From assembly GCA_001938485.1 (NCBI GenBank), contig MQRK01250900.1, forward strand, positions 1 through 62,425: a DNA stretch of 62,425 bases, read 5' to 3'. The number at the start of each line of letters is the position of its first letter. The first letter of the stretch is position 1. A model generated the notes under the pieces. It saw nothing but the letters and a program-made list of their open reading frames with translations, searched no databases and had not been told where the DNA came from. This DNA is from Girardia tigrina. Taxonomy: Eukaryota. Both the position numbers and the translations under genes were made by a program. Of this stretch, positions 7,300 through 44,833 are shown piece by piece.

Positions 7300-7600
7300 A
7301 TATCCATTTTTTATGCTGTTAGAAATCTATTTGGCCAAGAGAATTTTTTTTGTTATCTTTGTAGAAGAGAAACTTACTATTACATTTACTTTTTTTGCGT
7401 AATATATAAGTAGATATTTTTATACTAATATTGTTCAGGAAGACCTATTTAACCGAGTTTCCCATTTTGGGACCTTAAGAAGCTTCTTTGATCAAATTTT
7501 CACATAACCATTTATTGTCATCGAGAATGAGTAAGTGTGCAAAGTTTGAAGAAAATTAATTGAGTAAAAAGCCTTCAAAAATATGTTTCTAAATTCCATG
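7300..7600. repeat. Dispersed repeat family (inverted copy at about 43110-43440; short terminal piece at 38663-38703)
   Basis: cccattttgggacc...tttgatcaaattttcacataa...ttcaaaaatatgtttctaaattcc here matches the reverse complement of 43112-43260. Confidence 0.7.
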
Positions 7601-8193
7601 GTATTACTTCGATTTAACGCCGCGGCGTTTATTTCAAATGCTGAATCGAAGGTACGGCGTTAAATCGAAGGCGGCGTTTATTCGAGGGCGCGTTTATTTC
7701 AGAAATTAAAAAAATTAAAATTAAAAAAAACTATGCTTACGACTGGACATGAAAAAAGTCACATCACAGTGTGTCTGTCAGCTATGGCTGATGGACGTAA
7801 ATTGTTTGTCGTGTTTAAAGGAAAAAGAATACTGACGGAGTTGGTAGGAATATTAGGCGTTATCATTGAACTGTTTGACAATGGTTGGATGAAGCCTTAC
7901 AACACTATGACGTGGATTAACAAGGTGTCGGGTAACTTTGCCTTTCATCAGACTCTTGGTATGGGACTCATTCCGTTACCATTTAACCGCTGAGGCGTGA
8001 TATAAATAGGAGTGATATAATACTTTAATTAATAAAATTATACTGGTGCTTGAAACACAATATTACTTTTAGATATATTAATAAATTATGATTGATTGTA
8101 TAATTGTATTCTTTAATGCTGTGTTTATTCGAGGGCGGCGTTTATTATTAAATATCGCATAAGGATGCGGCGTTCAATCGAAGTAATACGGTA
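7601..8193 (+). mobile_element. Internally deleted pogo/Tigger-type DNA transposon
   Basis: TIR gtattacttcgatt / aatcgaagtaatacggta; repeated GCGGCGTTTATT subterminal motifs; DDE_1 fragment TTGHEKSHITVCLSAMADGRKL (7733-7993). Confidence 0.8.
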
Positions 8194-15198: not shown

Positions 15199-16461
15199 TT
15201 AGGTTATTTAAAAAATAATGTCGTTTTTTCACTTTAATCTTTATAGACAAATATCTCAGCGTCAAATCAACTTTAATAAGCGAAATAACAACCGTTAGCA
15301 TCAATACACTTTTGGCAACTTTGCAAAAGTTTATTTATTCCGGTTGCATAAAATTCTGACTTTCTGGAGGCTATGAAATTATTGAAGGCAGGTTTAGCAT
15401 CCCAATGATTTTCGAAGTATTTCTCCTGGAGGAAAATATCAAGATGTTTGAAAACGTGATAATCAGTAGGTGAGAGGTCAGATAAGTATGGTGGATGATT
15501 CAAAGTTTCGTTGCCAAGTTCGTTCAACAGTTGCATTGTCAGACGTTCGATGTGTAGCTGAGTGTTGTCGTGGAGAAGAATAGGCACCTCCCTATTGACT
15601 AATGCTGGTTGTTGTTGTTGTTGTTTTTGGTTCACTTTGACAATTTCCTGACAGAATCTCTCTGCCGTAATTGTTTCTCCTGGATTTAGGAAGCTATGAT
15701 GAATAACACCGGCTGCAGACCACCAAACAGTCACCATTATATTGTTTTGGAACAATTGCAGTCTCAGAAAAGGTTGCGGAGCTTGATCGTGGTGCAACTG
15801 TTGAGAAGAACATCTCCGATTGTCGTAGAGAATCCACTTTTCATCACACGTTAAAATTTGGTCCGGAAATGGATCATTCTTGTTCCGCAAAGAAGTGATG
15901 ACGATGCCTCAAAACGACGCATTTTTTGATTGTCATTTAATTCGTATGGAATTCATTTATGCAGTTTTTCGACTTCCCAATGTCACACAGATGGTATGAA
16001 ATTGTTCCTCCGCAAGCTCTCGAACTTTTGTGCGTGGATTTGCTTCTACTAGAGCCTTCAAATTTTCATTTTCAATAGCAGGTTTCCGTTCACGGCCATC
16101 ATCATCTTTGAGGGTCTCATCTCCTTCTTGAAATTTTTTGAACCAACGTTGTAACATACGTTCGTTTGTGGTTCCATCGCCCAATGTACCGTTGATATTA
16201 CGGACAGCCTCCGATACTTTGTGGTCAAGTTTGAATTCATATAAAAAAATTGCTCATAATTGCGCTTTTGCATATTGACAACTATTTAAAAAAACGCGTT
16301 ATTTTAAAGTTAATATTTAAACAAAGTATCATAAAAATATAGAGTTTTTCATAAGCTTTAAAATTATGTATAAAACATGAATAAATGATAAGGATTTATT
16401 TCAAAACATGAACAAAAATCAGGACCATTCAAAAAACGACATTATTTTTTAAACAACCTAA
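15199..16461 (-). mobile_element. Full-length decayed mariner (DD34D) transposon
   Basis: TIRs ttaggttatttaaaaaataatgtcgttttt / aaaaacgacattattttttaaacaacctaa, TA TSD; motifs TCDEKWILYDN, LLHDN, PYLSDLSPTDYHVF; frameshifted. Confidence 0.93.
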
Positions 16462-18320: not shown

Positions 18321-18409
18321 TATTTTAATGGACGAATTTTGTTTCTTAAAAAGGCCGTATATTAATTTTACCAAAAAAACATGTAATCAATTACCATTGT
18401 CCTCCTTTC

Positions 18410-21400
18410 TGTAACAACGAATCACAAATCTATAAAATTTATATTTCACTAACAAATACTTTTTAAATAGATATTATTTAAACAAATAATTATCTATATT
18501 TTTTCATGTTAAATATTTAATTTAAGAAATAAATTTAACATGTAACACTCCCCACAGATTCTTCATAACAAGAATCTATATCTACTACATACTCGTTCAA
18601 ATAATTTGGTTTTCGTCTTTCTCTTTGGGGTCTGTTGCTGATTCCCGATTCACTTTGCTTAACACTCGGAGCTGATTCGTTGTTATTTTCCAACATGTAA
18701 TCAGAGTAAGAGTTTCGCGGCGGGTCTGGTTGTCTTGGTCGAATATCTGCTATATGCCGTGGACCGCAAAAACCATCACAATTTATTAAGTACTTTCTTT
18801 GATCCAATTTTCTAACGACAACGCCTCTTGTCCATTGCTTTGTNNNNNNNNNNNNNNNNNNNNNCTTTACCCAGACTAACTGTTGCTCTACGAAGTCTGT
18901 CTTTACCTTATTGTAAACCGGCTCCTTTTCAATTCTTTCGATTATCTCCAAACCGACTGGAATGTACTTGTAAAGTACTGAACTAAGTGTCTCCTTTCCG
19001 TCGGACGGTGTATTGTTATACCATCATAAGGCTTCCATGATACTGATATTCGATCGAGACACAATTCTCTTGATTGTCTTATGATTTCTCTCTATTATTC
19101 CGTTGCAATTTGGTCGATTAATAGCACGGTATAAGACATGTACATTCCACTTTTCCATCAACTTGCTGAATTCGGCTGAATGAAATGTCGTATAATTGAC
19201 AATAATCAACTCCTTTAGAGATCCACGCTCGCAGAACAAATTTGAAAACTCTGTAACAATCGACTTGACATCCTCAGCTTTGATTAGTTTCCATACTGCA
19301 AATCGAGAGAGTCCACAATCAATGATACTTAAGAATTTTTGTTGATCAAATTTTGTGACATCCGCTGCAAGTCTTGTCCAGTTTTCATTGACAGCTAATT
19401 TTCCAGTTTCCCATTTTATTGGTGCCGGATTGACAACTTTGACACTTCGAGATCAAATCCTTTATATCCGCATTTGACACATTTATTTCCAACTTATCGC
19501 ACAGATATCGCATTCTCTTTGCACCTAAATGACATCTGTCATGAAGTTTNNNNNNNNNNNNNNNNNNNNNNNNNNNNNNNNNNNNNNNNNNNNNNNNNNN
19601 NNATTGTTTGGGTATTCTTGTCAGTTCATCAGCCTTGTTGTCTTCACTATTAACAAACTCAATTTTCAAAGTTATTTCGTATTCCTGGCACAACTCCTTA
19701 ATCATTGACAATCGGCGCTTTATGAAAAGTTCGGAAGAGGCTTTCGTGTGTAATTTATTTCGCTCTGATAGTGCCTCAGTTATCCAAGAAACAACTGATT
19801 TGTTATCTGATTTTACTACAACATTCGTTAGTCCCCATTTACTACACAGATTTAGACCCTTTACAAATGCTTCTAGTTCAGCTACGTTTATGTGCCTAGA
19901 ATCATCAGTTTTTCTTAACCACGATGCGTCTTCTATAATATTTCCTTTAACTTCCAATGTTGCCCCAATGGCTATCGAACTGGCATCACACCATATGATG
20001 CCGTCTTTACAATCATCAATACTCCATATTCCTCTACAAGGATCTTCCTTCTTAACTTTTTCAAAACAAATTTGATTTTCTCGAATAATTCGACATATAT
20101 TTTCTCATCCCACTTTCCTTCACTGAGCCTTTTCATGTAGGAGCATGATGGACGTAGCCAACCTGCAACAGGGTGGATTCCTATTAATTGGCCACACAGC
20201 GAATATAACTCGCGACGCGATATTGATTCGGCAAATATCTCGTCCTTGAAATGATTATCTCTCATCCATCTCATCGAATTCTTATCTTTAAAGACTTTAA
20301 CTCCCAACACTCGCACCTCTTTATCCATTGAGAGATTTTCTGGTTTTTTACATTTAAGATTAAATTTCTCGAACAGCATTCTAATTTCGTCAACTGTGAT
20401 TGTAGATTCGTCAATGTAAATGTCATCGATGTACGAGTCGGTGTTTTCACGTGCTCTAGGATCAGAATTTAAAATCCACTTGACAATTTCAGTCATAATG
20501 GCCGGAGCAATATTTAAACCAAAGCCCATCCTGGTTAGAGCGTACTTTTTCCATTAATGATGCATGATTGATAACGCCACATTTCCTTGTGAACGCGAAT
20601 CTGCATATACACCTCTGATAAATCAAGCATTGAAAATCTTGATCCTTTTCGCCGCCAGGTGCGAAGTTTTTCCAGACATATATCTGCTGAGCCACTGTAC
20701 ACATCTACATAATTGTTTAATTTCCTAAAATCAAAGATTGGTCTTATCTTGGATTTGTTAACTTGCAATATTCCAAATATGAGTATAGATCATATCGATT
20801 TACCCATTTCCTTCTCTTCATAATGGATTAAATAACCCTTCTTCATCCACTCCTCAAGGATTTTCATTGTAGCTATGTCTTTCGATTTGTCATCCTTAAA
20901 GGTCGAATGTCAAATTGGTAGATAAATCGGCGCTTCATCTTTCCACTTCCATTTAACCGTCCAATTATCCTTAAATTCAATCTCATAATTGTGTTTGTTC
21001 AGGCTAACACTTGGCACAACACCCGTGACACAACTCATATTGTCACCAGCCTTCATTAGTCCTTCTCCTACACACACACCAAATTCGACAACACCCTTAT
21101 TAATTTTTACACCCCCAAGTTCACTTATAACATCCATGCCAATTATAATTCCCAAATCATAGGGTAAGTATTTCATGACAGAACATTCTACTTTCATAGT
21201 TCTATTGTCTATAGTCAATTCCACATCACTAATCCCCACACATATATCATCGCCATTAGCCAAAANNNNNNNNNNNNNNNNNNNNNNNNNNNNNNNNNNN
21301 NNNNNNNNNNNNNNNAACGAGTTTCCCTTGATCAACCCTTTCAAAACAACAGTTTTTGAGTAACCCGAATCTATCAACGCTGTAACCGACTTGTTGTTAA

Positions 21401-22342
21401 CAATGACAGTCATGGTTGGCAGCGCCGGAAATGTCAGAGGGAAAGAGCCAGCGCCTACAAACTCCCCTGTCCGTTTCCCGACTTGCAATATTTTCCAATA
21501 TGTCCAACTTGCTTACATTTATAGCAAATTATTTGTCCATTAGATTGCCGCTGAGAATTTTCATAACGGTTAACCCTTGTTTGTACCAGATTTCCGTCAT
21601 GTGGCATACGGGGTTTTGTAAAGGAACTCCTTCTACCGCCGCTGACCTCACTTCGTTCTTTAGAAACGATCTTGCCTTCCCCAACGTTTTGTACCGCTGA
21701 TATTGAACTTTGTGTGACTCATTTTTTAATTCTTAAATATCTGCGACTATATTCAACCATTTCGGTTAAATCTTGATCGCCGGCCTGCTCTAAATTCAAT
21801 TGCAACTCGAACGGCAATCCAGCCATAAAGGCCGCCTTGGTCAGATCGTCGATTTTTGATGCCAACATCTTTACTTGAGAAACGTAATCGTCAATAGTTT
21901 GTCCTTCGTAATATTTCATATTAATCAGTTGGCTGTACGCAGATCGTCTGGTTATTCCGAATGAATTGTCCAAGATTTGCAGTACTTCTTCACAGTTGCT
22001 CTGTTCCTTTTCATCCAATTCCATGTATATATTTAACGGAACATCAATCAACAAAAAAGGAAGATATGGGGCCGGATCCAAAATCCCCTGGATTTTCATA
22101 ATCATCCTGAACTTTTTCTTCCAAATTTCAAACTGCCGTTTCCATTAAATTTCTCAAAATGATCGAGTATAATTTTTAAATCGCTTATCATTGTCTGTAT
22201 AGCTTGTAACAACGAATCACAAATCTATAAAATTTATATTTCACTAACAAATACTTTTTAAATAGATATTATTTAAACAAATAATTATCTAAATTTTTTC
22301 ATGTTAAATATTTCATTTAAGAAATAAATTTAACATGTAATA
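18410..22342 (-). mobile_element. Complete compact Gypsy-type LTR retrotransposon (3933 bp), frameshifted
   Basis: 138-bp LTRs 18410-18547 and 22205-22342 (about 3 mismatches); 5-bp TSD CTTTC on both sides; PPT-like GTGGGGAG before the 3' LTR; gag, protease ALIDSG, RT YIDD, RNase H, integrase NGIIERNHKTIK. Confidence 0.95.
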
Positions 22343-23644
22343 CTTTCTTTGAATTTAGTTGAATGTAGGTTAAGTACAATTTTATAAATTGTTCTCGGAG
22401 CAACGAAAAAGTCTTTAAATTATAAAACGTGTAGATCTTGAATTTGTTCCATTAATTTGAACCAAATATAAAAAATTAAAAGAATAAATATAAAAAATCC
22501 ACTCGATTACGCTAATAATAATTAAATTTTTATTCGGTAATGTAATTTTGTCGAAATATTTTGTGGGAAATTTAATATAATGTTTATGCAAAAGAATTAT
22601 TTATTTGAAGGCGATCTGATATATTTTATTAAACTAACATTTATAGCAAAATTTATTTCATTTTCTGTCATATTATTTTCTAACGAATTAAACTACAAAA
22701 AATTGAATAATAGAAATTAAGTATCAATTTAAATCTTTTAAATATTCAAAAATTTTCTCACTTATAAACGGATAACATTTGTTTTAATCGCTAATATCTA
22801 CGAAACAATACCAAGTACAATTTGAAAAAAAGTAAGTGAATAAATATAAATTAAATGTATTAGTTTTGGTTGGAATATCATTTCTGTTTTATGTTAAATA
22901 ATGCATTATTTGATGTCTGGTTTTTGTTATTTTAATGTTTATTGAAAATCCAATTGTTATAGTCATGTGTGTGCGAGTCAAACAAACTGATATACAAACG
23001 ATTCGTTATCAATTACTTCAGCGTCATATCTTTCAATAATTAACGACTTCTCCTGACTATTTTTTCAACGTCAGACATTAATAGAATTGTTGAAATTTTC
23101 TATTGAATTGTTTATTTCATAATCAAACTAGAACAGAGAGTTCGTTTGCTTTACAATCTTTTTTATTGTATAAAACTATATGAATTAAAAAAAGAAATTG
23201 AGTTAATTTATTATTTATGACCAATTTTATAAATTTTAAATTAAAACAATTTTAACCAATCATATTCACTCGAATGCAAATTAAGAGGCCCAACTACCAA
23301 TCGGTGTACAAATCTCTTTTTCTCCACATTAGTATCTAATTCAATTTTATAATTTTGTTTAAAAAAAATTTTCCATCAGTAATTTTTTATTTAAAAATGG
23401 CGTATGAAAACTCACAAAGATATCTACACTTGTAAGATATGGTTTTGTTAATTAAATTATTTTTTTCAATGAATTTTCTGTTGAATGATTCCCTTAAAGT
23501 TAGTCTTAAAAATGTAAATTATCAATTATGTAATAATAATATTTTTTTCTTTAAAATTCAATTCAATTTAATTCACTTCAATTTAATTTTAGAATTCAGG
23601 TGATAATTCATTACACATAACCATTCCATAAAAAAATTATATTA

Positions 23645-28675: not shown

Positions 28676-28799
28676 AAGTTATCATTGCATAACTCTTTGA
28701 ATATTCCTGGATCCTAAAGTTATCATTACATAACTCTTTGAATATTCCTGGATCCTAAAGTTATCATTACATAACTCTTTGAATATTCCTGGATCCTAA
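28676..28799. repeat. Tandem repeat, 41 bp x 3
   Basis: Unit aagttatcatt(g/a)cataactctttgaatattcctggatccta, no spacers. Confidence 0.95.
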
Positions 28800-29446
28800 A
28801 TACTCCTGTTCCATATATCAGCTATACCGTAATCTGCTCAGTCCAACCGATTCAACGTGAGTGTTTGTTTCCTGATATATATGATCATTTTCAATATTAT
28901 TTACCACCTAACATCAAAATCGATTGTTGTGCAGTGTTCTTAAAACAGTTTGAAGAATCCATGATTCTTTGTTTCCTTTTTCCTAATCTGATTTCCGGTT
29001 TTTAGTAATATCCTGGTTTTACCAAATATTTTTATCTTAATTACAAGTTATTGTTAATATTTCTTATAACTATCATTTATTAATAATTATTTATTTATTA
29101 ATAATTATTAATAATTTATTATTAATAATTATGAGTATTTGTACGTATTATTAGCATTTACATTGATGAAAGAAAATTATTTTTCCATTGGATCAGAAAT
29201 CGATTAGAAAGATTCTTTTGTAGAAGAATTCATTTTTTCCAAATATATATGTAGTTCGATCTCGATTACTTATCAAAATGATTATATCTACGTCACTTAA
29301 ATGAAATCAACACTAAACTAATATCTTTCGATCTCAGCATAAATATCTATTTAAATTCTTTGTCTTAATTGCAACAATTAAAGAAGATATGATGTCGATG
29401 ACTTCCTTCCATTTTCGAAACACTACATTCCCTTTGACTCGCAAAA

Positions 29447-34084: not shown

Positions 34085-37000
34085 TAACAGCATCAGCCAG
34101 AACCCCCGTTGTGACTCGACAGTTTTATCACAGTAACGATTCATATTTTTTAATTGTGTCCTACATTTCAGATTGGCGTTAAATCTTTTGGCTATCATGT
34201 TTATGCTATTGAACACAGCCCTGATTGATGGAGAGTCGTCGACATGTCTTCTACAATCTACAAAGACCAATCACACTCTCGATTCATGATGATTTTTAAA
34301 ATTGGTTTCTCTGCAAGTAAAGCATCTGTGACGATTTCTGCGATTGCATTATGTCTCGCCTGTATCAGAGTGCTGTTGGGTTTACACCAACATAGAACAT
34401 GGATCTGTGTTTCTATATCTTGACCACATGCCCTACACGTCGATTGTTGTCTTGGTTTTTTCGGCTTATAATTTGTTGGTAAACTATTTGTCCTTGCGTT
34501 GTGTAAAAATCGCCATTCCTCGATTGATAGTGACTCATTGTATAATACTTTGGAGCTGAAGTTGTGTTCTGCAAATGAGATGGCTGACATTCCAGCCATC
34601 ATTTGTTTGCTCCATTTGTCAAATTTCATTTTGTTATAGATTCTGTGCAAGTGGAAAGTTATACTGTCTATTGAGTGTTTACTTAGTATCATGGAATCAT
34701 TGGATATGTGAACTTTTAAACAAATACCTAGCTCGTTAGTGANNNNNTGAATTTGTAACCCAATGCCTTTCAGGTATTTGATTGAATTCCGAATCTTGGT
34801 CCACCAAGATTTAAATCCATTCTCTTTGTCACCTGTGTTGATCCAGTTTAGGTAATCAGAGAGTGTCCATTCTTCTTTAGTACCGTGATATCTGTCTAGG
34901 GTGTTGAATAAATTGATAAAGGTGAGATGACGCGATGTTTCGTCTGAGCACACCATGTTCCTGTACGCTTGAATTATAGATTGCATTGCGTATTCATCTC
35001 GGGCAGAGACTAAACCTAAACCACCTTTTTTCTTGTCAGCATAAATGTAATCATTGGATGAATTTGGGACCGTTCCACAAATCTTCTTCAAGTAACAACG
35101 AATTTCCACGTCAAGGCCGCTTTTAAAGATAGACTTCGTGGTTTCGTGGTGGCCATAATCCGTAAGTTCCCTGTTTGTATGTTATAGTTTTGAAAATAGA
35201 AGGTGAATCGTGAGTGTATAAAGATTCTATACGCTTCTATTTTCTGCCAGGGAAATAGTATTGATTTGGTTATTTTTTTCAAGTCCTTAATAGTTGATAG
35301 AAATAGACGTTCAGGAGTGAATTTTGTCTTTCTGGTAAAGTCTACTCCGAGATAACGGTAACCTTCTTCATCCGTTACTATAGGTATTGGTATGTTATTA
35401 ATATGGATTGATTCATTCATAAGAGGAGTTGATAAATATCCATATTTGGCTGGGTTAAACTTCATAGAAGTCCATTCAACCATGTCACATACAGATGAAA
35501 CCATGGCTTGTGTAGTCATTTAATTTATATAGGATTTAATTCCTATAATATAATTAAATCGATTAACAAATTGACAAAATGAAATGTTAAATTGTTACAC
35601 GTTGGAAATATATTTTGGAAATATTATTCTCGGTTTTTTTATTTTAAAAAGTGAAGACACTTTCGGTTCTTCACAATTGGATCCCACTTCTGACACCAAT
35701 TGTGAAGAACCGAAAGTGTCTTCACTTTTTAAAATAAAAAAACCGAGAATAATATTTCCAAAATATATTTCCAACGTCTAACAATTTAACATTTCATTTT
35801 GTCAATTTGTTAATCGATTTAATTATATTATAGGAATTAAATCCTATATAAATTAAATGACTACAGCTTGTAAACAAGAGTTGCTGGTTGCAACTAGTGC
35901 AATATCATCTGCATATGCCAGACAAGTAATCTTACCAGCCTCGGTGTCGATACCAAAAGCATCATTATCTTGTAGTGCAGCCAANNNNNNNNNNNNNNNN
36001 NNNNNNNNNNNNNNNNNNNNNNNNNNNNNNNNNNNNNNNNNNNNNNNNNNNNNNNNNNNNNNNNNNNNNNNNNNNNNNNNNNNNNNNNNNNNNNNNNNNN
36101 NNNNNNNNNNNNNNNNNNNNNNNNNNNNNNNNNNNNNNNNNNNNNNNNNNNNNNNNNNNNNNNNNNNNNNNNNNNNNNNNNNNNNNNNNNNNNNNNNNNN
36201 NNNNNNNNNNNNNNNNNNNNNNNNNNNNNNNNNNNNNNNNNNNNNNNNNNNNNNNNNNNNNNNNNNNNNNNNNNNNNNNNNNNNNNNNNNNNNNNNNNNN
36301 NNNNNNNNNNNNNNNNNNNNNNNNNNNNNNNNNNNNNNNNNNNNNNNNNNNNNNNNNNNNNNNNNNNNNNNNNNNNNNNNNNNNNNNNNNNNNNNNNNNN
36401 NNNNNNNNNNNNNNNNNNNNNNNNNNNNNNNNNNNNNNNNNNNNNNNNNNNNNNNNNCAGCCATTGTTCCAGTTGAGTACATAGGCAAGATGTGAACAAC
36501 TTGGCAATGCATTCCATCAGGGCTATTGGTCTCCATGATCCTATATCTTTGTAATTTCCTGACTTACCTGGTTTAGCGTCATCATCTTTTTATATCATCA
36601 TTGCTATTATTATTTTTTTTTATACTGACAGTTTTTTTGAGTGTTCTCAGAGGCAACTTTAATGCCATTCATCGAAAATAGACTTTTGACAATTGCATAG
36701 TTTGATAAAGTGATTTTATGTTCTTTGACAATATTTTGTAAGGTAATCTTTAGCTTAACATCAGCATCTCTAAGTCTAAATGTGCTATCTAGATTGTTTA
36801 GTAATTTTAGAGTTTTATATATTTTATTTTTGGCTTCTTCGTGATTTTCTTTTTTTAGAGAGTCATGAAGTTGCAATGAAATCTCGTCACACAGCAGCCT
36901 GACTGCAATGCCATAGCCATCGCACTGTTTGTGATATCTGTCACATATAGATTCAAAGATGTACTCTAATTTCTCTGGAGAGAAGACAGTCGGAGCTCTA

Positions 37001-38660
37001 TGTGTTATGAGCGCTTCTTTCCATGAGGGTGGTGCTGGGCTTCCTAATTCAAAAGCCTGTCTATTTAGTTTGTCCAAGAACCAGCGTGGGATATTGTTTA
37101 CTCTTTCTATCCCCTCCGCAACACAGTGAATATTTTTTATAAAGGTTGATAAAATTTTATGTCTATGAATCTTTTCTAGAGTTTTAATTGCGGAATCGCT
37201 AATTACTATTTTTTCAGCCGTTACGATGCTGGCAACTGCAGCAGATTGTTTTTTAATTTGGTCATGAATCAATTCGAAAGCGTGTTCAAAATTATCTCTA
37301 CTGACATGATCTGCTGCAAAAATTGGTGGTAGAAAAAATAGTGGTTTAGTCAAGTCAGATGCGACCGGTGTAATATGAATGAGGTCATCGCTATCATGAC
37401 CTGAATAATCCTCTTTCTGGTTAACTAAAGGTGTTTCAACGGTCTCAGAAGATTTATATAATATTACATCATTAGATAATAAAGTGTTATTTTCATTATT
37501 TTCAGCGGTATCGTGTTTCTCGTTAGAGTTTTCTATATTTTTAGTATTATTTTGTATAGTAATACGCAGCTCGTTAGAGACCGCACGGTCCACCCCAGTT
37601 GTTTCGGGTTCTACCGAGCGGAAATCCGTAGGGTTTCCGCGAGGAAAATTTTTTTCCATTTTTTTGAATTATTGTTATTATTTGATGATTTAAACAGATC
37701 TGAAAATGTTTGCTTTTTTTATTATTTTTAATTTTTCAATATTATTAATTTCATGATTATTAATTGATTTTTGGTTTTTCCAACCGCTACTGTTATAAAA
37801 TTTTTTTTATTTTTATTAATAGCTGTTGTCCAGCCATCGTCATCGTTAAAAATAATATTTTCTATGTAATTGTTAAATAGAATTTCAAAGATTATATTTC
37901 CAAATAATAGAAATAATGAATTAAGATTTCCATTATTTAATTCAATTATTTCATCGGAATTAAATTCCATATTGTAATTAGTTTTGAATTGTTTACTTTT
38001 GATAAATTTCATGAAGCATTTATCAAAGTATTCAATAAATAGCATTTTAAAAATTTTTTTGTTATTTTTGCTTTTAAAGAATATTTTCAATAATTCGTCA
38101 AATTTGATTAAAGAGTCATTTTTATTATCATTTTTTAAATTATCATTAAGAAAATTATTAAATATTGACAAATTAATATTTTCATTATCAATAAATTTAT
38201 TTAAATTTTTTATAAACGATTGATAGTTTAAAAACTGAAAAAAAAGATCATGAAAATTTTTGTTAATGAGGCTATTTATGTTCTTATTATTTAAAATAGT
38301 TAAATTATTACGATATTCTTCGTAAGAATCACTCAAACCGTCTATTTCCTTTGTTCCATTATCCGGTCGGTCGGTCATTCGGTTAGTCGGTCGATTTCTC
38401 CAGTTTCCCTTGGTCATGTCCACAAATCGGGGCACCAGTATAACCGCACGCGTTTGGACTTTCTGAAAAGTCTTCCATTCGGCATGGGTTCATTCCGACT
38501 CGTTCTCTGTTGTTTATTTTGTCAAACTTTATGGATTTTATAGTTGTATCCAGAAAATCTTCGGCCACCACATTTAATAATTCGATATTCTTATTATTAA
38601 AGTGGTTAACCGGCATTTTATTAATTATTTCGACCATTTCTTTAGTGAAAGGCGAAAAGA
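34085..38660 (-). mobile_element. Decayed non-LTR retrotransposon with restriction-like endonuclease (R2/NeSL-type)
   Basis: RT WRPIAL (about 36520), LAYADDIAL, FNPAK, YRYLGV, KGGLGL; zinc knuckle CRACGQDIETQIHVLCWC followed by RHNAI; long N-terminal ORFs 36610-38637. Confidence 0.88.
35511..35865. mobile_element. Palindromic LTR-PBS-inverted LTR insertion (355 bp)
   Basis: 170-bp arms with one mismatch; each arm contains a 165-bp TGT..ACA unit; centre ATCCCACTTCTGACACCA; 5-bp TSD GCTTG; excision restores the RT frame CLQA|MVSSVC. Confidence 0.9.
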
Positions 38661-38706
38661 CCTTGAGTGAAAGGCCTTCAAAAACAGGTTTCTAAATTCC
38701 ATGGAT

Positions 38707-40253: not shown

Positions 40254-42715
40254 CCCTAGAAAGATAAACTTATTTTTTTGTACAGAAAAGATAAACAGGC
40301 GCCTCAGAGGCGCAAAATTTTAAATACCAATTTATTTAAATATTAAAATAAAAAAACTTATTTTTTATATATCAATTAAATGTTACATTATTATTAAATA
40401 AATAAAACACAAATAGGTATTATTATTTGTTTATTTTAGGGAATCATGTTCAATTTTCAAAAAAGTAACAAAAATTATAAATTTTTATAGTACTAACAAT
40501 TTTTAAGCATTTTTTTAAGAATAGCTAACTTTTTATAACATTTTGTCTTACTAACTAATAAGTTACAATATAATCAGTCTCAAATCACAAAAAATACTGA
40601 AAAAATCACGAGTTATAAAAATTTGTTGCAAACATCTTTTTTATGTTCGCCACATACGGTTTTTTTACATTTCGTACAAGTCATCTTAGACATTCTCTTT
40701 TTTTTTGTTGTACAAATGCTACAATAACGCCGCACTTTAGTTGGAGGTTCTTCATCAGCTTCTTGAGGAAGTTCTAGATTAGCCTGTGGTAGGATCTTCT
40801 CTATATTTTCTCTCAAACTTNNNNNNNNNNNNNNNNNNNNNNNNNNNNNNNNNNNNNNNNNNNNNNNNNNNNNNNNNNNNNNNNNNNNNNNNNNNNNNNN
40901 NNNNNNNNNNNNTTTTTCTTGTTTTGACAAAATATTGTGAGTGTAAATTATATAAGAATTGACAAAAGCTATATTTAACATGCCATAAAACATTGTCATC
41001 GGCCATCTGTTAGTTTTCCTAGAACAAGACATCGAAGAACACATCTGATCAAAAGCATCGACGCCGACTTTAGTCTGGTTGTAGAACATAATGATCTCAG
41101 GTTTACCAGTTGTTAAATTTATTGCAGCATCTTCATCACACGATGATAGCATATACACCATCTTTGAAGGCTTCGGCTTGTATGATGCTAGGGTCAAAGG
41201 TCCATCAAAACAGAACATAGATGTACCAACAGGTCGAGAACGACTGTTTTTCAATTCTTCAGGAATTTCCCGTTTGTTTGACCGAACAGTACCCATAACT
41301 GTCTATTTATACGGTTCCAGAAGTAATGACTTAGCAGCAGGGATAGATGTGAACCAATTGTCGCATGTAATATTGCGGTTGGAACCATGAACTGGCTGAG
41401 ATAACTCCTTCAAGTAATATTTTCCTTGCGGCAAACCATTTGTATTTGTAGCTTTTCCAATGTATGGCAAAGCATTTATCATATAATTGGTCCCACTATC
41501 GCACATCATTGGAATCTTTATACCATATTTATTTGGTTTGTTTGGTATATACATCCTAAATGGACATCTACCACGAAATCCAAGTAATTGTTCATCAATA
41601 TTCACATTACTTCCAGGGGAATAATTCATTTTGCATTGAGCTATAAACATGTCCCAAACCTTTCTAATTGGAATAAATGGATCTTTCTGGCGACGATTTG
41701 GACGTAAAGTTTTGTCATCCATTCTGAAACCTGACAATAAAGTCAAACCTATCTCTACTCATTACTGCCACATATCTTGAGCCCGTAAATGAACGGCCAA
41801 ACAGCTCAACTGTTGATAAATGATTATCTTTCATCGCAGCGCTAAGAGTAAGCAGTCCTGTGAAAGCTTCGATTTCAGTGGCATTTGTGTCTGCAAATGT
41901 CAAACCAGTCATAGTATCAGAACGTTTTTTCAATATCTCTACATTGGTCCACTGAACAATTTCTTGAATGATTTCTTCCGTAATAAATAATTGTAAGCAT
42001 CCAAGTGGTTCAAAAACGTTTCTACACATACGACTAGGACCACTATTAGAGCGAACTATATTGATCGCAGCTGTTCTGCCACTACTTTGCCCTTTAGAAG
42101 TAGCCCAAACATGGCTGTTCTTACCTCTGATCACTCTTTGCGGCGGGATTACTATGCGGTGGTCATGTCTTAGATTTTCAGAAGTTGTTGAGGTATCATT
42201 CAGGCTTTCTTCGATAACTTCGTCTATGTATTCGTCTTCGGAATCACTCTGAACGTTATCTTCACTTACATGGTCCTCCGTCTCGCTGTTACTGCCATCC
42301 TCGGTCTCTTCATCTTCCTCGATCAAAAAAGAAGCAATTTCGCTTTCTTCCAACCGTTTTCTGTACGCCATGATGTTAAAACGTTCCTAAAAACCATTAA
42401 AATTTATTTAGTAATAATAAAATATCTTTATATATTTACCATAAATACGTAATAATAGGTAAAAAGTAAAAAAAACAAAATCACTAATAAATGTGTAAAA
42501 GTTACAGAGTAGATAAACATGCGCCTCTCGAGTGCAACGCAATGTCATAGCGGCGAAACTAAAGTACTTACCGGATAGCAGCGGTCGTCCCTCTGGCCTG
42601 TTGACCGACGACTGAGTTGGCTCGAAAACACAAGCGTAAACTCGCGCGGGTTAGAAAAAGACAGCGATATATCTGTTTCGCGGGCGCCTCTGAGGCGCAG
42701 TTTATCTTTCTAGGG
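40254..42715 (-). mobile_element. Full-length piggyBac transposon (T. ni type), transposase frameshifted (42371-40613)
   Basis: TTAA TSDs; TIR CCCTAGAAAGATA; internal repeat GCGCCTC(A/T)GAGGCGC; IDEQLLGFRGRCPFRMYIPNKPNKYGIK, TCDNWFTS, VDAFDQ, C-terminal cysteine-rich domain. Confidence 0.97.
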
Positions 42716-43776
42716 TTAATAAATTTGATTTTTAATAAATAATAATTATCAAAGGCTTTGAAGACGCAAAACTTGGTCTTGTCTTGTCCATGTATTTTTC
42801 AACTTTATTGTGTCATCTTACTAATACTATTATATACTATGAAACTGAGTAATGTATATAAATCCTACAAAATTTTAAGAAATAAAATTTAAATGAGTTT
42901 TAAAATAATAAGAAATTAGTCTTATAAAAATTCAGACACCGTTCAAATTATTTATTGGAAATTATTGTTGAGTGAAGATATAATTTTTTTAATTGTTTGT
43001 TTTGTCTCATCATGACTGGTGCATCCATCGAAATTAATTAATTCTTTTAAGAATAGATAATTTGTATCATGTATGAATTTTTATTCTATTATTTATATTA
43101 ACTTACTTTCTAGGAATTTAGAAACCTATTTTTGAAAGCTTTTTACTCAATCAATTTTCTCCAAATTTTGCACATTTACTCATTTTCGATGACAATAAAT
43201 TATTATGTGAAAATTTGATCAAAAAAACGTTTTATGGTCCCAAAATGGGAAAAACGGAAAATTCAGAGTTCCAGAACAATATTAATTGTAAAAGATTTAC
43301 TTATAAATTATAAGTAGTTTATATTAATTTTTTATTATGTTTTTTAAAATATTTTTTCAATTAAAACTTTGTTGGCAAAGTAGAGTTCTGTTTGCATAAA
43401 GAATGGATATAAAAAAATATGTTTTTTGATTTACTAGTTAAATGAAACTTAATTTACTTTTTTTCTGACAAAAGAAACTTAGTAGCAAAATCTGTATTAA
43501 CATGTTTCAATAAATAATGTTTACTCCTCATTATTGCTTAGAAAAACTTTGATAATATATCATGTTTAAATATTTAACTTTCTGAATAAATTTTAGTAAA
43601 TATCTTCAATTGAATAAAACAATATTAACATAAAAATTAAAATATTACCATTTCGAAATTCAAAGGTAAAATATTGTTGAAAAATTCAGTATTATTTATG
43701 GTAAATAAAGATATTTCAATTCCGATAGGGTTTTACTTATAAATTTTTTTAATAAATAACAAAATATTAATTTTAG

Positions 43777-44565: not shown

Positions 44566-44833
44566 ACATTAATTTCCAAGTTATAATCGATTGATTGTTG
44601 TAAATATTTTTTGGTTTGGACAACATTAATTCTTTTATTTGTGGCTAAATATATTCTGTCTCTTAAAATTTGAACTTAATTTACTCGTTAAAGAGATTAC
44701 ATTAATTTCCAAGTTATAATCGATTGCTTGTTGTAAATATTTTTTGGTTTGGACAACATTAATTCTTTTATTTGTGGCTAAATATATTCTGTCTCTTAAA
44801 ATTTGAACTTAATTTACTCGTTAAAGAGATTAC
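44566..44833. repeat. Tandem duplication, period about 133 bp x 2
   Basis: Near-identical copies starting acattaatttccaagttataatcg. Confidence 0.9.

What the first reader, a model, noticed from the sequence alone, without database searches (positions are those of the whole stretch)
35506..35870. Palindromic LTR / tRNA-Leu PBS / inverted-LTR element: apparent integrated fold-back of (+) strong-stop DNA
Seen: 170-bp inverted arms (35511-35680 and 35696-35865, one mismatch), a perfect 5-bp TSD GCTTG, and clean interruption of the RLE element's RT frame. Each arm holds a 165-bp TGT..ACA unit (35511-35675, 35701-35865). The centre, 35681-35698, is ATCCCACTTCTGACACCA, so the minus strand reads LTR-AT-TGGTGTCAGAAGTGGGAT-CCAAT-inverted LTR. 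Established: that 18-mer is the 3' end of eukaryotic tRNA-Leu(CAA) including CCA (positions 59-76, stopping at m1A58), a common Gypsy PBS. LTR plus exactly 18 nt of PBS is the (+) strong-stop DNA, and TG..CA ends with 4-6 bp TSDs are an integrase signature. Inference: strong-stop DNA snapped back and copied itself instead of doing the second strand transfer, and the product, with two U3 ends, was integrated. It looks like a MITE but is retro-derived, unlike TRIMs or solo LTRs. It could be a route from LTRs to TIR elements, and its transcript would be a 170-bp dsRNA able to trigger silencing of the parent family. It lies in a host intron, so it is probably transcribed.
Basis: partly seen in the sequence, partly recalled or inferred. 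Interest (0 to 1): 0.88.

Follow-up and report, generated by a model that had tools for sequence, protein, structure and literature searches.

The report
Inverted LTR pair joined by PBS
A 355-bp insertion made of two inverted copies of a retrotransposon LTR joined through one exact tRNA-Leu primer-binding site sits, with a 5-bp target duplication, inside an R2-like reverse-transcriptase gene; it looks like a rare integrated by-product of faulty reverse transcription, but only this one copy could be examined.

Summary
Arms 35511-35680 and 35696-35865 are 170 nt with one mismatch. The centre is 15 nt. A perfect 5-bp duplication (GCTTG) flanks the element, and the reading frame of the interrupted gene is the same on both flanks.

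The 18 nt at 35681-35698 (minus strand) are the exact complement of the mature 3' end of metazoan tRNA-Leu(CAA). They lie 2 nt after a TGT..ACA unit of 165 nt.

The element therefore reads LTR, spacer, complete PBS, then an inverted copy running from the third PBS base back to the U3 end. It has no polypurine tract and no internal sequence.

The best reading is an aberrant reverse-transcription product. A complete plus-strand strong-stop DNA was joined 3'-to-3' to a second plus-strand copy, and integrase inserted the product through two U3 ends.

No base pairing explains the join.

Four reader claims are untested here: 'Gypsy', 'host intron', 'silencing trigger' and 'route to TIR elements'.

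No second copy exists in the window or in any reachable collection. None of 110 other loci carrying this PBS shows the structure. I found no paper describing it. I rate it a rare, probably one-off, new variant of a known kind.

The parts
35506..35510 (.). Left copy of the 5-bp target-site duplication (GCTTG)
   Evidence: identical to 35866-35870.
35511..35675 (+). LTR-like unit, 165 nt, TGT..ACA, read in LTR sense on the + strand (left arm)
   Evidence: It differs from the reverse complement of 35701-35865 at one position. GC content is 23%.
35676..35680 (+). Spacer AT plus TGG. This is the innermost 5 nt of the left arm and equals the spacer and first 3 PBS bases.
   Evidence: the arms extend 5 nt beyond the 165-nt unit.
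35681..35698 (-). Complete 18-nt primer-binding site, complementary to positions 59-76 (with CCA) of tRNA-Leu(CAA). 35681-35695 is the unpaired centre; 35696-35698 pairs with 35678-35680.
   Evidence: unique exact match in the window; first 18 nt of the tRNA-Leu(CAA) probe in PMC7997516; 3' end of the tRNA gene L049:1768-1877.
35699..35700 (-). 2-nt spacer (AT) between LTR end and PBS
   Evidence: Spacers of 0-3 nt after CA occur in 84 of 113 other loci with this PBS.
35701..35865 (-). LTR-like unit, 165 nt, read in LTR sense on the - strand (right arm). With 35681-35700 it forms a complete plus-strand strong-stop DNA of 185 nt.
35866..35870 (.). Right copy of the target-site duplication (GCTTG)
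34258..36536 (-). RT-to-endonuclease part of an R2-like non-LTR retrotransposon gene, given as one part. It is interrupted by the palindrome, carries one frame change and contains two N runs.
   Evidence: A YADD motif and a weak RVT_1 match lie just upstream of the insertion. The piece just downstream matches R2Bm RT chains 8gh6/8ibw, residues 682-767, E = 0.003. The C-terminal piece matches R2 proteins 9nl3/9dou, E about 0.001-0.002.

Best explanation
The element is a dead-end by-product of reverse transcription of an LTR retrotransposon that uses tRNA-Leu(CAA) as primer, inserted by that element's integrase.

One arm plus the centre (35681-35865, minus strand) is a complete plus-strand strong-stop DNA: the whole LTR, a 2-nt spacer and the 18 nt copied from the tRNA primer. 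It did not make the second strand transfer. Instead its 3' end became joined 3'-to-3' to a second plus-strand copy that ends after the first three PBS bases. The second copy was either the same molecule (snap-back) or a sibling strand in the particle. Copying then ran to the U3 5' end.

Once both strands were complete, the product was a 355-bp duplex whose two outer ends are both U3 termini (TGT...). Integrase used these two ends in a concerted reaction and made the 5-bp duplication.

The anatomy, the PBS identity, the TSD and the clean interruption of the host gene are shown. The order of events, the enzyme that made the join and the self-versus-sibling template are inferred. The product has no PPT, no direct R repeat and no genes, so it should not be able to copy itself again.
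For: The join at 35680|35681 falls exactly at the end of the 18-nt tRNA copy, which is the natural 3' terminus of plus strong-stop DNA. The general scheme of 18-nt PBS pairing and plus strong-stop DNA is in PMC6088434. The stop before m1A58 is from my own knowledge.

Both arms end exactly at the outer TGT of the 165-nt unit, where a plus strand primed at the PPT begins. No PPT or internal sequence is present.

[quoted passage not shown] Another LTR element in this window, 18410-22342, also has a 5-bp TSD and short 138-nt TGT..ACA LTRs.

The PBS 18-mer is a real, widely used PBS. At least 116 metagenome loci carry it, CA lies 0-3 nt upstream in 84 of 113, and Ty3/Gypsy-order pol genes lie downstream in 4 of 7 long cases.

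The host frame is identical on both flanks. Fold-back self-priming is an established failure mode of the minus strong-stop DNA (PMC6088434).
Against: Only one copy was found. The 165-nt unit was never seen as a direct LTR pair or next to gag/pol.

The join has no templated homology. The predicted fold of the 185-nt strand leaves its 3' end unpaired and nowhere near the entry point.

A pure snap-back gives a hairpin with a single duplex end. A further, undocumented copying step is then needed before two-ended integration.

Why a plus strand should end after TGG is unexplained. An early RNase H cut that leaves the tRNA's CCA on the minus strand is a guess.

The structure is absent from 110 other loci with the same PBS.

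A 473-base N run begins 115 nt from the element, so local assembly quality cannot be judged.
Confidence: 0.68

Rival explanations
1. The origin is the same, but host end-joining made the join rather than reverse transcriptase. Two double-stranded LTR-plus-PBS fragments were ligated tail to tail, one end intact and the other trimmed back by 15 bp. Integration followed.
For: The join has no homology and is asymmetric (18 nt against 3 nt of PBS), as end-joining with nibbling would give.
Against: It needs two free duplex LTR-PBS fragments whose minus strands stop exactly at the U3 boundary. No known step of reverse transcription produces these. The trimmed end stops exactly after the complement of CCA, which random nibbling does not predict.
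Confidence: 0.1
2. It is one member of a multi-copy, MITE-like family of palindromic LTR elements that recurs or is mobilised in trans, not a one-off.
For: It has the size and shape of a MITE, perfect ends and a TSD. The arms differ at only 1 of 170 positions, so it is young or homogenised.
Against: There is no second copy in 62 kb and none in viral, metagenome or prokaryote collections. LTR integrases do not excise DNA. A transcript of this element lacks a PPT and a direct 3' R, so ordinary retrotransposition of the palindrome itself is not expected (inference).
Confidence: 0.12
3. It is an assembly, cloning or amplification fold-back artefact.
For: Palindromes are typical chimeric artefacts. 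The window is a gapped scaffold with 12 N runs, one of them 115 nt away.
Against: An artefactual fold-back duplicates local sequence. It does not create foreign LTR-plus-PBS DNA flanked by an exact 5-bp duplication inside a gene whose frame and collinearity with R2 proteins continue on both sides. The asymmetric 15-nt centre equals a tRNA 3' end.
Confidence: 0.05
4. It is a non-autonomous Ginger-type or other DDE DNA transposon whose terminal inverted repeats merely resemble an LTR.
For: Ginger elements have TG..CA termini and an integrase-related transposase (PMC6839031). The structure is TIR plus TSD.
Against: The reported TSDs are 4 bp (Ginger1) and 6 bp (Ginger2, GingerRoot), not 5. An exact 18/18 match to a tRNA 3' end placed 2 nt after the CA end has a chance expectation far below 0.02 per window, and a DNA transposon gives no reason for it.
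Confidence: 0.03
5. A normal full-length element inserted here and was later rearranged in the chromosome by deletion plus inversion.
For: LTR elements are often rearranged. The host region is full of decayed transposons.
Against: The 3' LTR would have to be inverted with breakpoints exactly at its two ends, keeping the TSD. The deletion would have to start exactly after PBS base 18.
Confidence: 0.03

Closest known systems
Plus-strand strong-stop DNA of LTR retroelements (replication intermediate)
   Same: One arm plus the centre has exactly its composition: a full U3-R-U5 unit, a spacer, and 18 nt copied from the tRNA primer (scheme in PMC6088434).
   Different: The intermediate is normally transient and is consumed by the second strand transfer. 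Here it is fixed in a chromosome, joined to an inverted copy.
Self-primed (fold-back) minus-strand strong-stop DNA
   Same: It is a strong-stop DNA that copies a strand of its own polarity instead of transferring, giving a dead-end hairpin (PMC6088434).
   Different: That case concerns the minus strand, is driven by a real 3' hairpin, is described in vitro, and is not known as an integrated product. Here the plus strand is involved and no priming hairpin is predicted.
Solo LTRs and TRIM/LARD-type non-autonomous LTR elements
   Same: These are non-coding LTR derivatives with TG..CA ends and a 4-6 bp TSD. TRIMs keep a PBS.
   Different: Solo LTRs have one LTR and no PBS. TRIMs have direct LTRs plus both PBS and PPT and can be retrotransposed in trans. 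This element has inverted LTRs and no PPT.
Ginger1/Ginger2/GingerRoot DNA transposons
   Same: They have an integrase-related enzyme and inverted terminal repeats. Ginger has TG..CA termini (PMC6839031).
   Different: Their TSDs are 4 or 6 bp, they have a transposase gene or derived MITEs, and they have no tRNA-complementary centre.
MITEs and foldback elements
   Same: They are short, non-coding and nearly perfectly palindromic, with a TSD.
   Different: Those are deletion derivatives of DNA transposons and are multi-copy. This one is built from retroelement parts and is single-copy as far as can be seen.
DIRS retrotransposons
   Same: They are retroelements with inverted terminal repeats (context).
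   Different: DIRS use a tyrosine recombinase and make no TSD. They have an internal complementary region and no tRNA PBS (my own knowledge, plus the abstracts of PMC3950715 and PMC7192593 listed).

Membership tests
LTR-retrotransposon-derived sequence | Terminal unit with 5'-TG..CA-3' ends | tested here: met
   Both 165-nt units read TGT..ACA.
LTR-retrotransposon-derived sequence | PBS complementary to a tRNA 3' end within a few nt of the LTR end | tested here: met
   18/18 match to tRNA-Leu(CAA) with CCA, 2 nt after ACA.
LTR-retrotransposon-derived sequence | Target-site duplication of 4-6 bp | tested here: met
   GCTTG on both sides.
LTR-retrotransposon-derived sequence | Two LTRs in direct orientation | tested here: not met
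   The two units are inverted.
LTR-retrotransposon-derived sequence | Polypurine tract next to the 3' LTR, and internal gag/pol or remnants of them | tested here: not met
   Only 25 nt lie between the two 165-nt units, and all of them are spacer or PBS.
LTR-retrotransposon-derived sequence | The same LTR found in full-length or solo copies elsewhere in the genome | not testable with these tools
   There is no copy in the window. The source genome is not in any collection searched.
Ty3/Gypsy parentage | PR-RT-RNaseH-IN gene order in the parent element | not testable with these tools
   The parent was not found. The PBS precedes this gene order in 4 of 7 long metagenome loci, which makes it plausible only.
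MITE / TIR DNA transposon | Multi-copy family sharing TIRs with an autonomous transposase-bearing element | tested here: inconclusive
   It is single-copy in 62 kb, and no relative was found among 119 loci. The whole genome is not available.
Ginger1 / Ginger2 / GingerRoot | TSD of 4 bp (Ginger1) or 6 bp (Ginger2, GingerRoot) | tested here: not met
   The TSD is 5 bp. Family values are from PMC6839031.
DIRS | No TSD; internal complementary region; tyrosine recombinase | tested here: not met
   A TSD is present, and there is no internal region at all.
R2-like (RLE-bearing) non-LTR retrotransposon (the interrupted host element) | RT followed by a C-terminal zinc knuckle and restriction-like endonuclease, collinear with R2 proteins | tested here: met
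   Three separate pieces match in collinear order: RVT_1 around YADD (E = 0.02), R2Bm residues 682-767 (E = 0.003), and R2 proteins residues 920-1028 / 1141-1249 (E about 0.001-0.002). Each match is weak alone. No rRNA target was seen.

The most novel reading that the evidence does not exclude
Plus-strand strong-stop DNA that fails to transfer may be a recurrent source of integrase-inserted palindromic 'retro-MITEs'. These would have a defined join after the tRNA's CCA. They would occur in many LTR families, act as ready-made hairpin-RNA loci against their parents, and offer a structural route from LTRs to the inverted repeats of integrase-type DNA transposons.
Probability: 0.08. Interest if true: 0.85.

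Novelty: new variant of a known kind. Interest (0 to 1): 0.55.

Why it matters
If real, this is a chromosomal fossil of a replication intermediate that is normally invisible. It would show that an LTR integrase can insert, in vivo, a product carrying two U3 ends. It would also show that a failed second strand transfer can leave heritable DNA. Such insertions are perfect 170-bp hairpins when transcribed, so they could in principle feed small-RNA silencing of the parent family. They also mimic MITEs and could be misclassified in repeat annotation. With a single copy and no access to the genome, these consequences stay hypothetical.

Tried and rejected
Searches for relatives:
- Other copies of the arm in the window: none.
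- Family-specific patterns (U5 end plus PBS start; U3 start) in viral contigs and genome contigs: all blank.
- The junction pattern in viral contigs: blank.
None is related to the arm. None carries an inverted LTR after the PBS: the best local score was 36, against 335 for the window.
- Other palindromes in those loci have no LTR/PBS centre.

Attempts to reach the source genome:
- Exact-protein look-ups of three window ORFs found nothing on record.
- A homology search with the R2-like C-terminal piece gave only two metagenome fragments at 56% identity.

Other blanks:
- The window has no tRNA genes and no Rfam families.
- Pfam at default threshold was blank on all ORF pieces.
- The 39-aa upstream piece found no informative PDB match.
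- Nine literature searches found no description of an integrated LTR-PBS-inverted-LTR element. An older paper on defective retroviral DNA that I had in mind could not be located, so I do not cite it.

Considered and rejected:
- Autointegration, because its products are circles.
- The 2-LTR circle junction, because that is a direct U5-U3 join.
- Tf1-type self-priming, because the PBS here is tRNA-complementary.

Not run: a protein search with the 65-aa ORF inside the palindrome. The source genome is evidently absent from that collection, so the shared compute was not justified.

Full report
OBSERVATION.
- Arms 35511-35680 and 35696-35865 are reverse complements over 170 nt. The one mismatch is at 35598.
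- The arms are separated by 15 nt and flanked by GCTTG at 35506-35510 and 35866-35870.
- Each arm contains a 165-nt TGT..ACA unit. The innermost 5 nt of each arm are AT plus TGG (or CCA plus AT on the other side).
- No other long, high-identity inverted repeat in the 62-kb window is anything but simple sequence.
- As RNA the region folds into one hairpin of -249 kcal/mol, z = -45.7 against shuffles.

THE CENTRE. Read on the minus strand, 35698-35681 is an 18-mer.
- It is unique in the window. Allowing up to three mismatches, 0.02 matches are expected by chance.
- It is identical to the first 18 nt of the oligonucleotide that PMC7997516 lists as the probe for mouse tRNA-Leu(CAA).
- Independently, a metazoan contig from the metagenome scan carries a tRNA gene at L049:1768-1877. 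That gene has anticodon CAA, an intron and a long variable arm. Its last 15 nt equal 35681-35695. With the added CCA this gives the 18-mer.
- Counting back from the 3' end, the 18 nt are positions 59-76. The copy therefore stops just before position 58. That this position is m1A and stops the polymerase is established knowledge that I did not test.

The 18-mer is a genuine, common PBS. Of 113 non-tRNA contexts, 84 have a CA dinucleotide 0-3 nt upstream. Of 7 long downstream ORFs, 4 have protease, RT, RNase H and integrase in Ty3/Gypsy order.

CONTEXT. The element lies in a minus-strand gene of an R2-like non-LTR retrotransposon.
- The stretch just upstream of the insertion carries a YADD motif and matches Pfam RVT_1 around that motif (E = 0.02).
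- The stretch just downstream matches the Bombyx R2 RT structures 8gh6/8ibw at residues 682-767 (E = 0.003).
- The C-terminal stretch matches R2 proteins 9nl3/9dou (E about 0.001-0.002) and weakly matches zf-RVT.
- Each match is weak, but the three are collinear.
- The codon phase is the same at 35870 and 35510, and insert plus one TSD copy is 360 nt. The insertion is therefore clean.
- Between 34258 and 36536 the gene carries, besides this insertion, one frame change and two N runs. I give no positions, and the N runs were not filled.
- ORFs further upstream (36610-38637) had no recognisable domain and are left unassigned.
- There is no rRNA or other Rfam family in the window. The neighbourhood is a transposon graveyard.
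- Whether the region lies in a host intron could not be tested.

WHAT IS MISSING. There is no polypurine tract, no internal sequence, no direct LTR pair and no second copy.
- The arm has no relative in the window, in 119 fetched loci, in viral contigs or in prokaryote genome contigs.
Exact look-ups of window ORFs found nothing. The R2-like protein has only two metagenome relatives, at 56% identity.

RARITY. Among the loci with the same PBS, 110 non-tRNA contexts had enough sequence to test. None has an inverted copy of its upstream LTR after the PBS: the best score was 36, against 335 for the window. Other palindromes in those loci lack an LTR/PBS centre.

MECHANISM. The anatomy constrains the mechanism strongly.
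- On the minus strand, 35865-35681 is LTR, AT and an 18-nt tRNA copy. This is the exact composition of plus-strand strong-stop DNA (scheme in PMC6088434).
- What follows is the complement of a plus strand, from the third PBS base back to the first U3 base. That first base is where a PPT-primed plus strand starts.
- Seen from either strand, the join at 35680|35681 links the natural 3' terminus of a full strong-stop DNA to a plus strand ending after TGG. It is a 3'-to-3' join.
If it is a sibling plus strand that ends at TGG, extension of both 3' ends yields a fully complementary 355-bp duplex with two U3 ends directly.
- The snap-back version yields a hairpin with one duplex end and needs another copying step before a two-ended integration.
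- The sequence cannot tell the two versions apart.
- No templated homology exists at the join. The predicted DNA fold of the 185-nt strand leaves the 3' end free and far from the entry point. The join was therefore a homology-free template jump or a ligation.
- A plus strand ending at TGG would follow if RNase H left the tRNA's CCA on the minus strand. This is a guess.
- Integration through two U3 ends is inferred from the outer TGT termini and the 5-bp duplication. A separate LTR element in this window (18410-22342) also has 138-nt TGT..ACA LTRs and a 5-bp TSD.
- Fold-back self-priming is documented for minus strong-stop DNA as a dead-end (PMC6088434). I found nothing comparable for the plus strand, and nothing for integrated products. 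The paper library is incomplete, so this is not proof of absence.

RIVALS.
- An assembly artefact would duplicate local sequence. It would not import an LTR and a PBS with a TSD into an otherwise continuous gene.
- A Ginger-type transposon is contradicted by the TSD length: 4 or 6 bp in that group (PMC6839031). It also gives no reason for the tRNA match.
- A chromosomal rearrangement of a normal insertion would need three exactly placed breakpoints.
- End-joining of two LTR-PBS fragments and recurrence as a family remain open.

- 'Gypsy' is plausible, not shown.
- The 170-bp dsRNA is a correct prediction of folding if the locus is transcribed. Transcription, silencing and the 'route to TIR elements' are conjecture.

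LIMITS AND CONDUCT.
- The metagenome loci are retrotransposon-bearing contigs of unknown hosts. I used them only for counts, spacing and domain order.
- I did not scan viral contigs with the bare PBS, so as not to fetch animal retroviruses by pattern.
- Slip: notebook entries 1 and 2 cite the bounds of the ORF pieces that I used as search queries. The place of the frame change in the R2-like gene can be inferred from them. I noticed this afterwards, deleted nothing, and do not repeat those bounds here.

VERDICT. This is a real and unusually clean structure. It is best read as an integrated tail-to-tail plus-strand product of an unidentified LTR retrotransposon. It is rare, probably a one-off, and its wider significance is untested.

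Noticed in passing
window 18405-22347 (minus strand): An LTR retrotransposon with 138-nt TGT..ACA LTRs (22342-22205 and 18547-18410, about 98% alike) and a 5-bp TSD, GAAAG. A purine run lies before the 3' LTR. The pol gene is fragmented into protease, RT-connection and RNase H pieces and holds three N runs. The sequence after the 5' LTR does not start with TGG, so its primer is unclear. It is unrelated to the palindrome's arm.
   Followed up: partly
window 15273-15890 and 40613-42371 (minus strand): A mariner-type transposase fragment (Transposase_1, E = 1e-20) and a piggyBac-type transposase in several ORF pieces (DDE_Tnp_1_7, E = 1e-27 and 8e-17). The region is dominated by decayed transposons.
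   Followed up: partly
window 7400-7601, 38654-38704, 43113-43310: An unclassified repeat shared by three places at about 84% identity (one copy inverted). The middle copy lies just beyond the upstream ORFs next to the R2-like gene.
   Followed up: no
window 44566-44831 and 28676-28800: A 133-nt unit duplicated in tandem (99% identity), and a 41-nt unit present three times in tandem (98% identity).
   Followed up: no
window 36610-38637 (minus strand): Three ORFs (349, 235 and 84 aa) directly upstream of the R2-like RT have no Pfam match. One is very rich in N, K and I. Whether they are the N-terminal part of the same element is unknown.
   Followed up: partly
L021:7857-8214: In one metagenome LTR element, the 179 nt starting at the PBS are duplicated in tandem (98% identity). 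This gives two PBS copies in direct orientation.
   Followed up: partly
L015:1753 and L117 (minus strand, 562): In two related loci the PBS is followed at once by 7 nt that are the reverse complement of the LTR's last 7 nt. The inverted match does not extend further, so it may be chance or a short stem.
   Followed up: partly
L049:700-3996: A metazoan contig in a metagenome carries a dense cluster of at least 12 tRNA genes plus a signal-recognition-particle RNA gene. The tRNA-Leu(CAA) gene in it happens to be followed by CCA in the DNA.
   Followed up: partly
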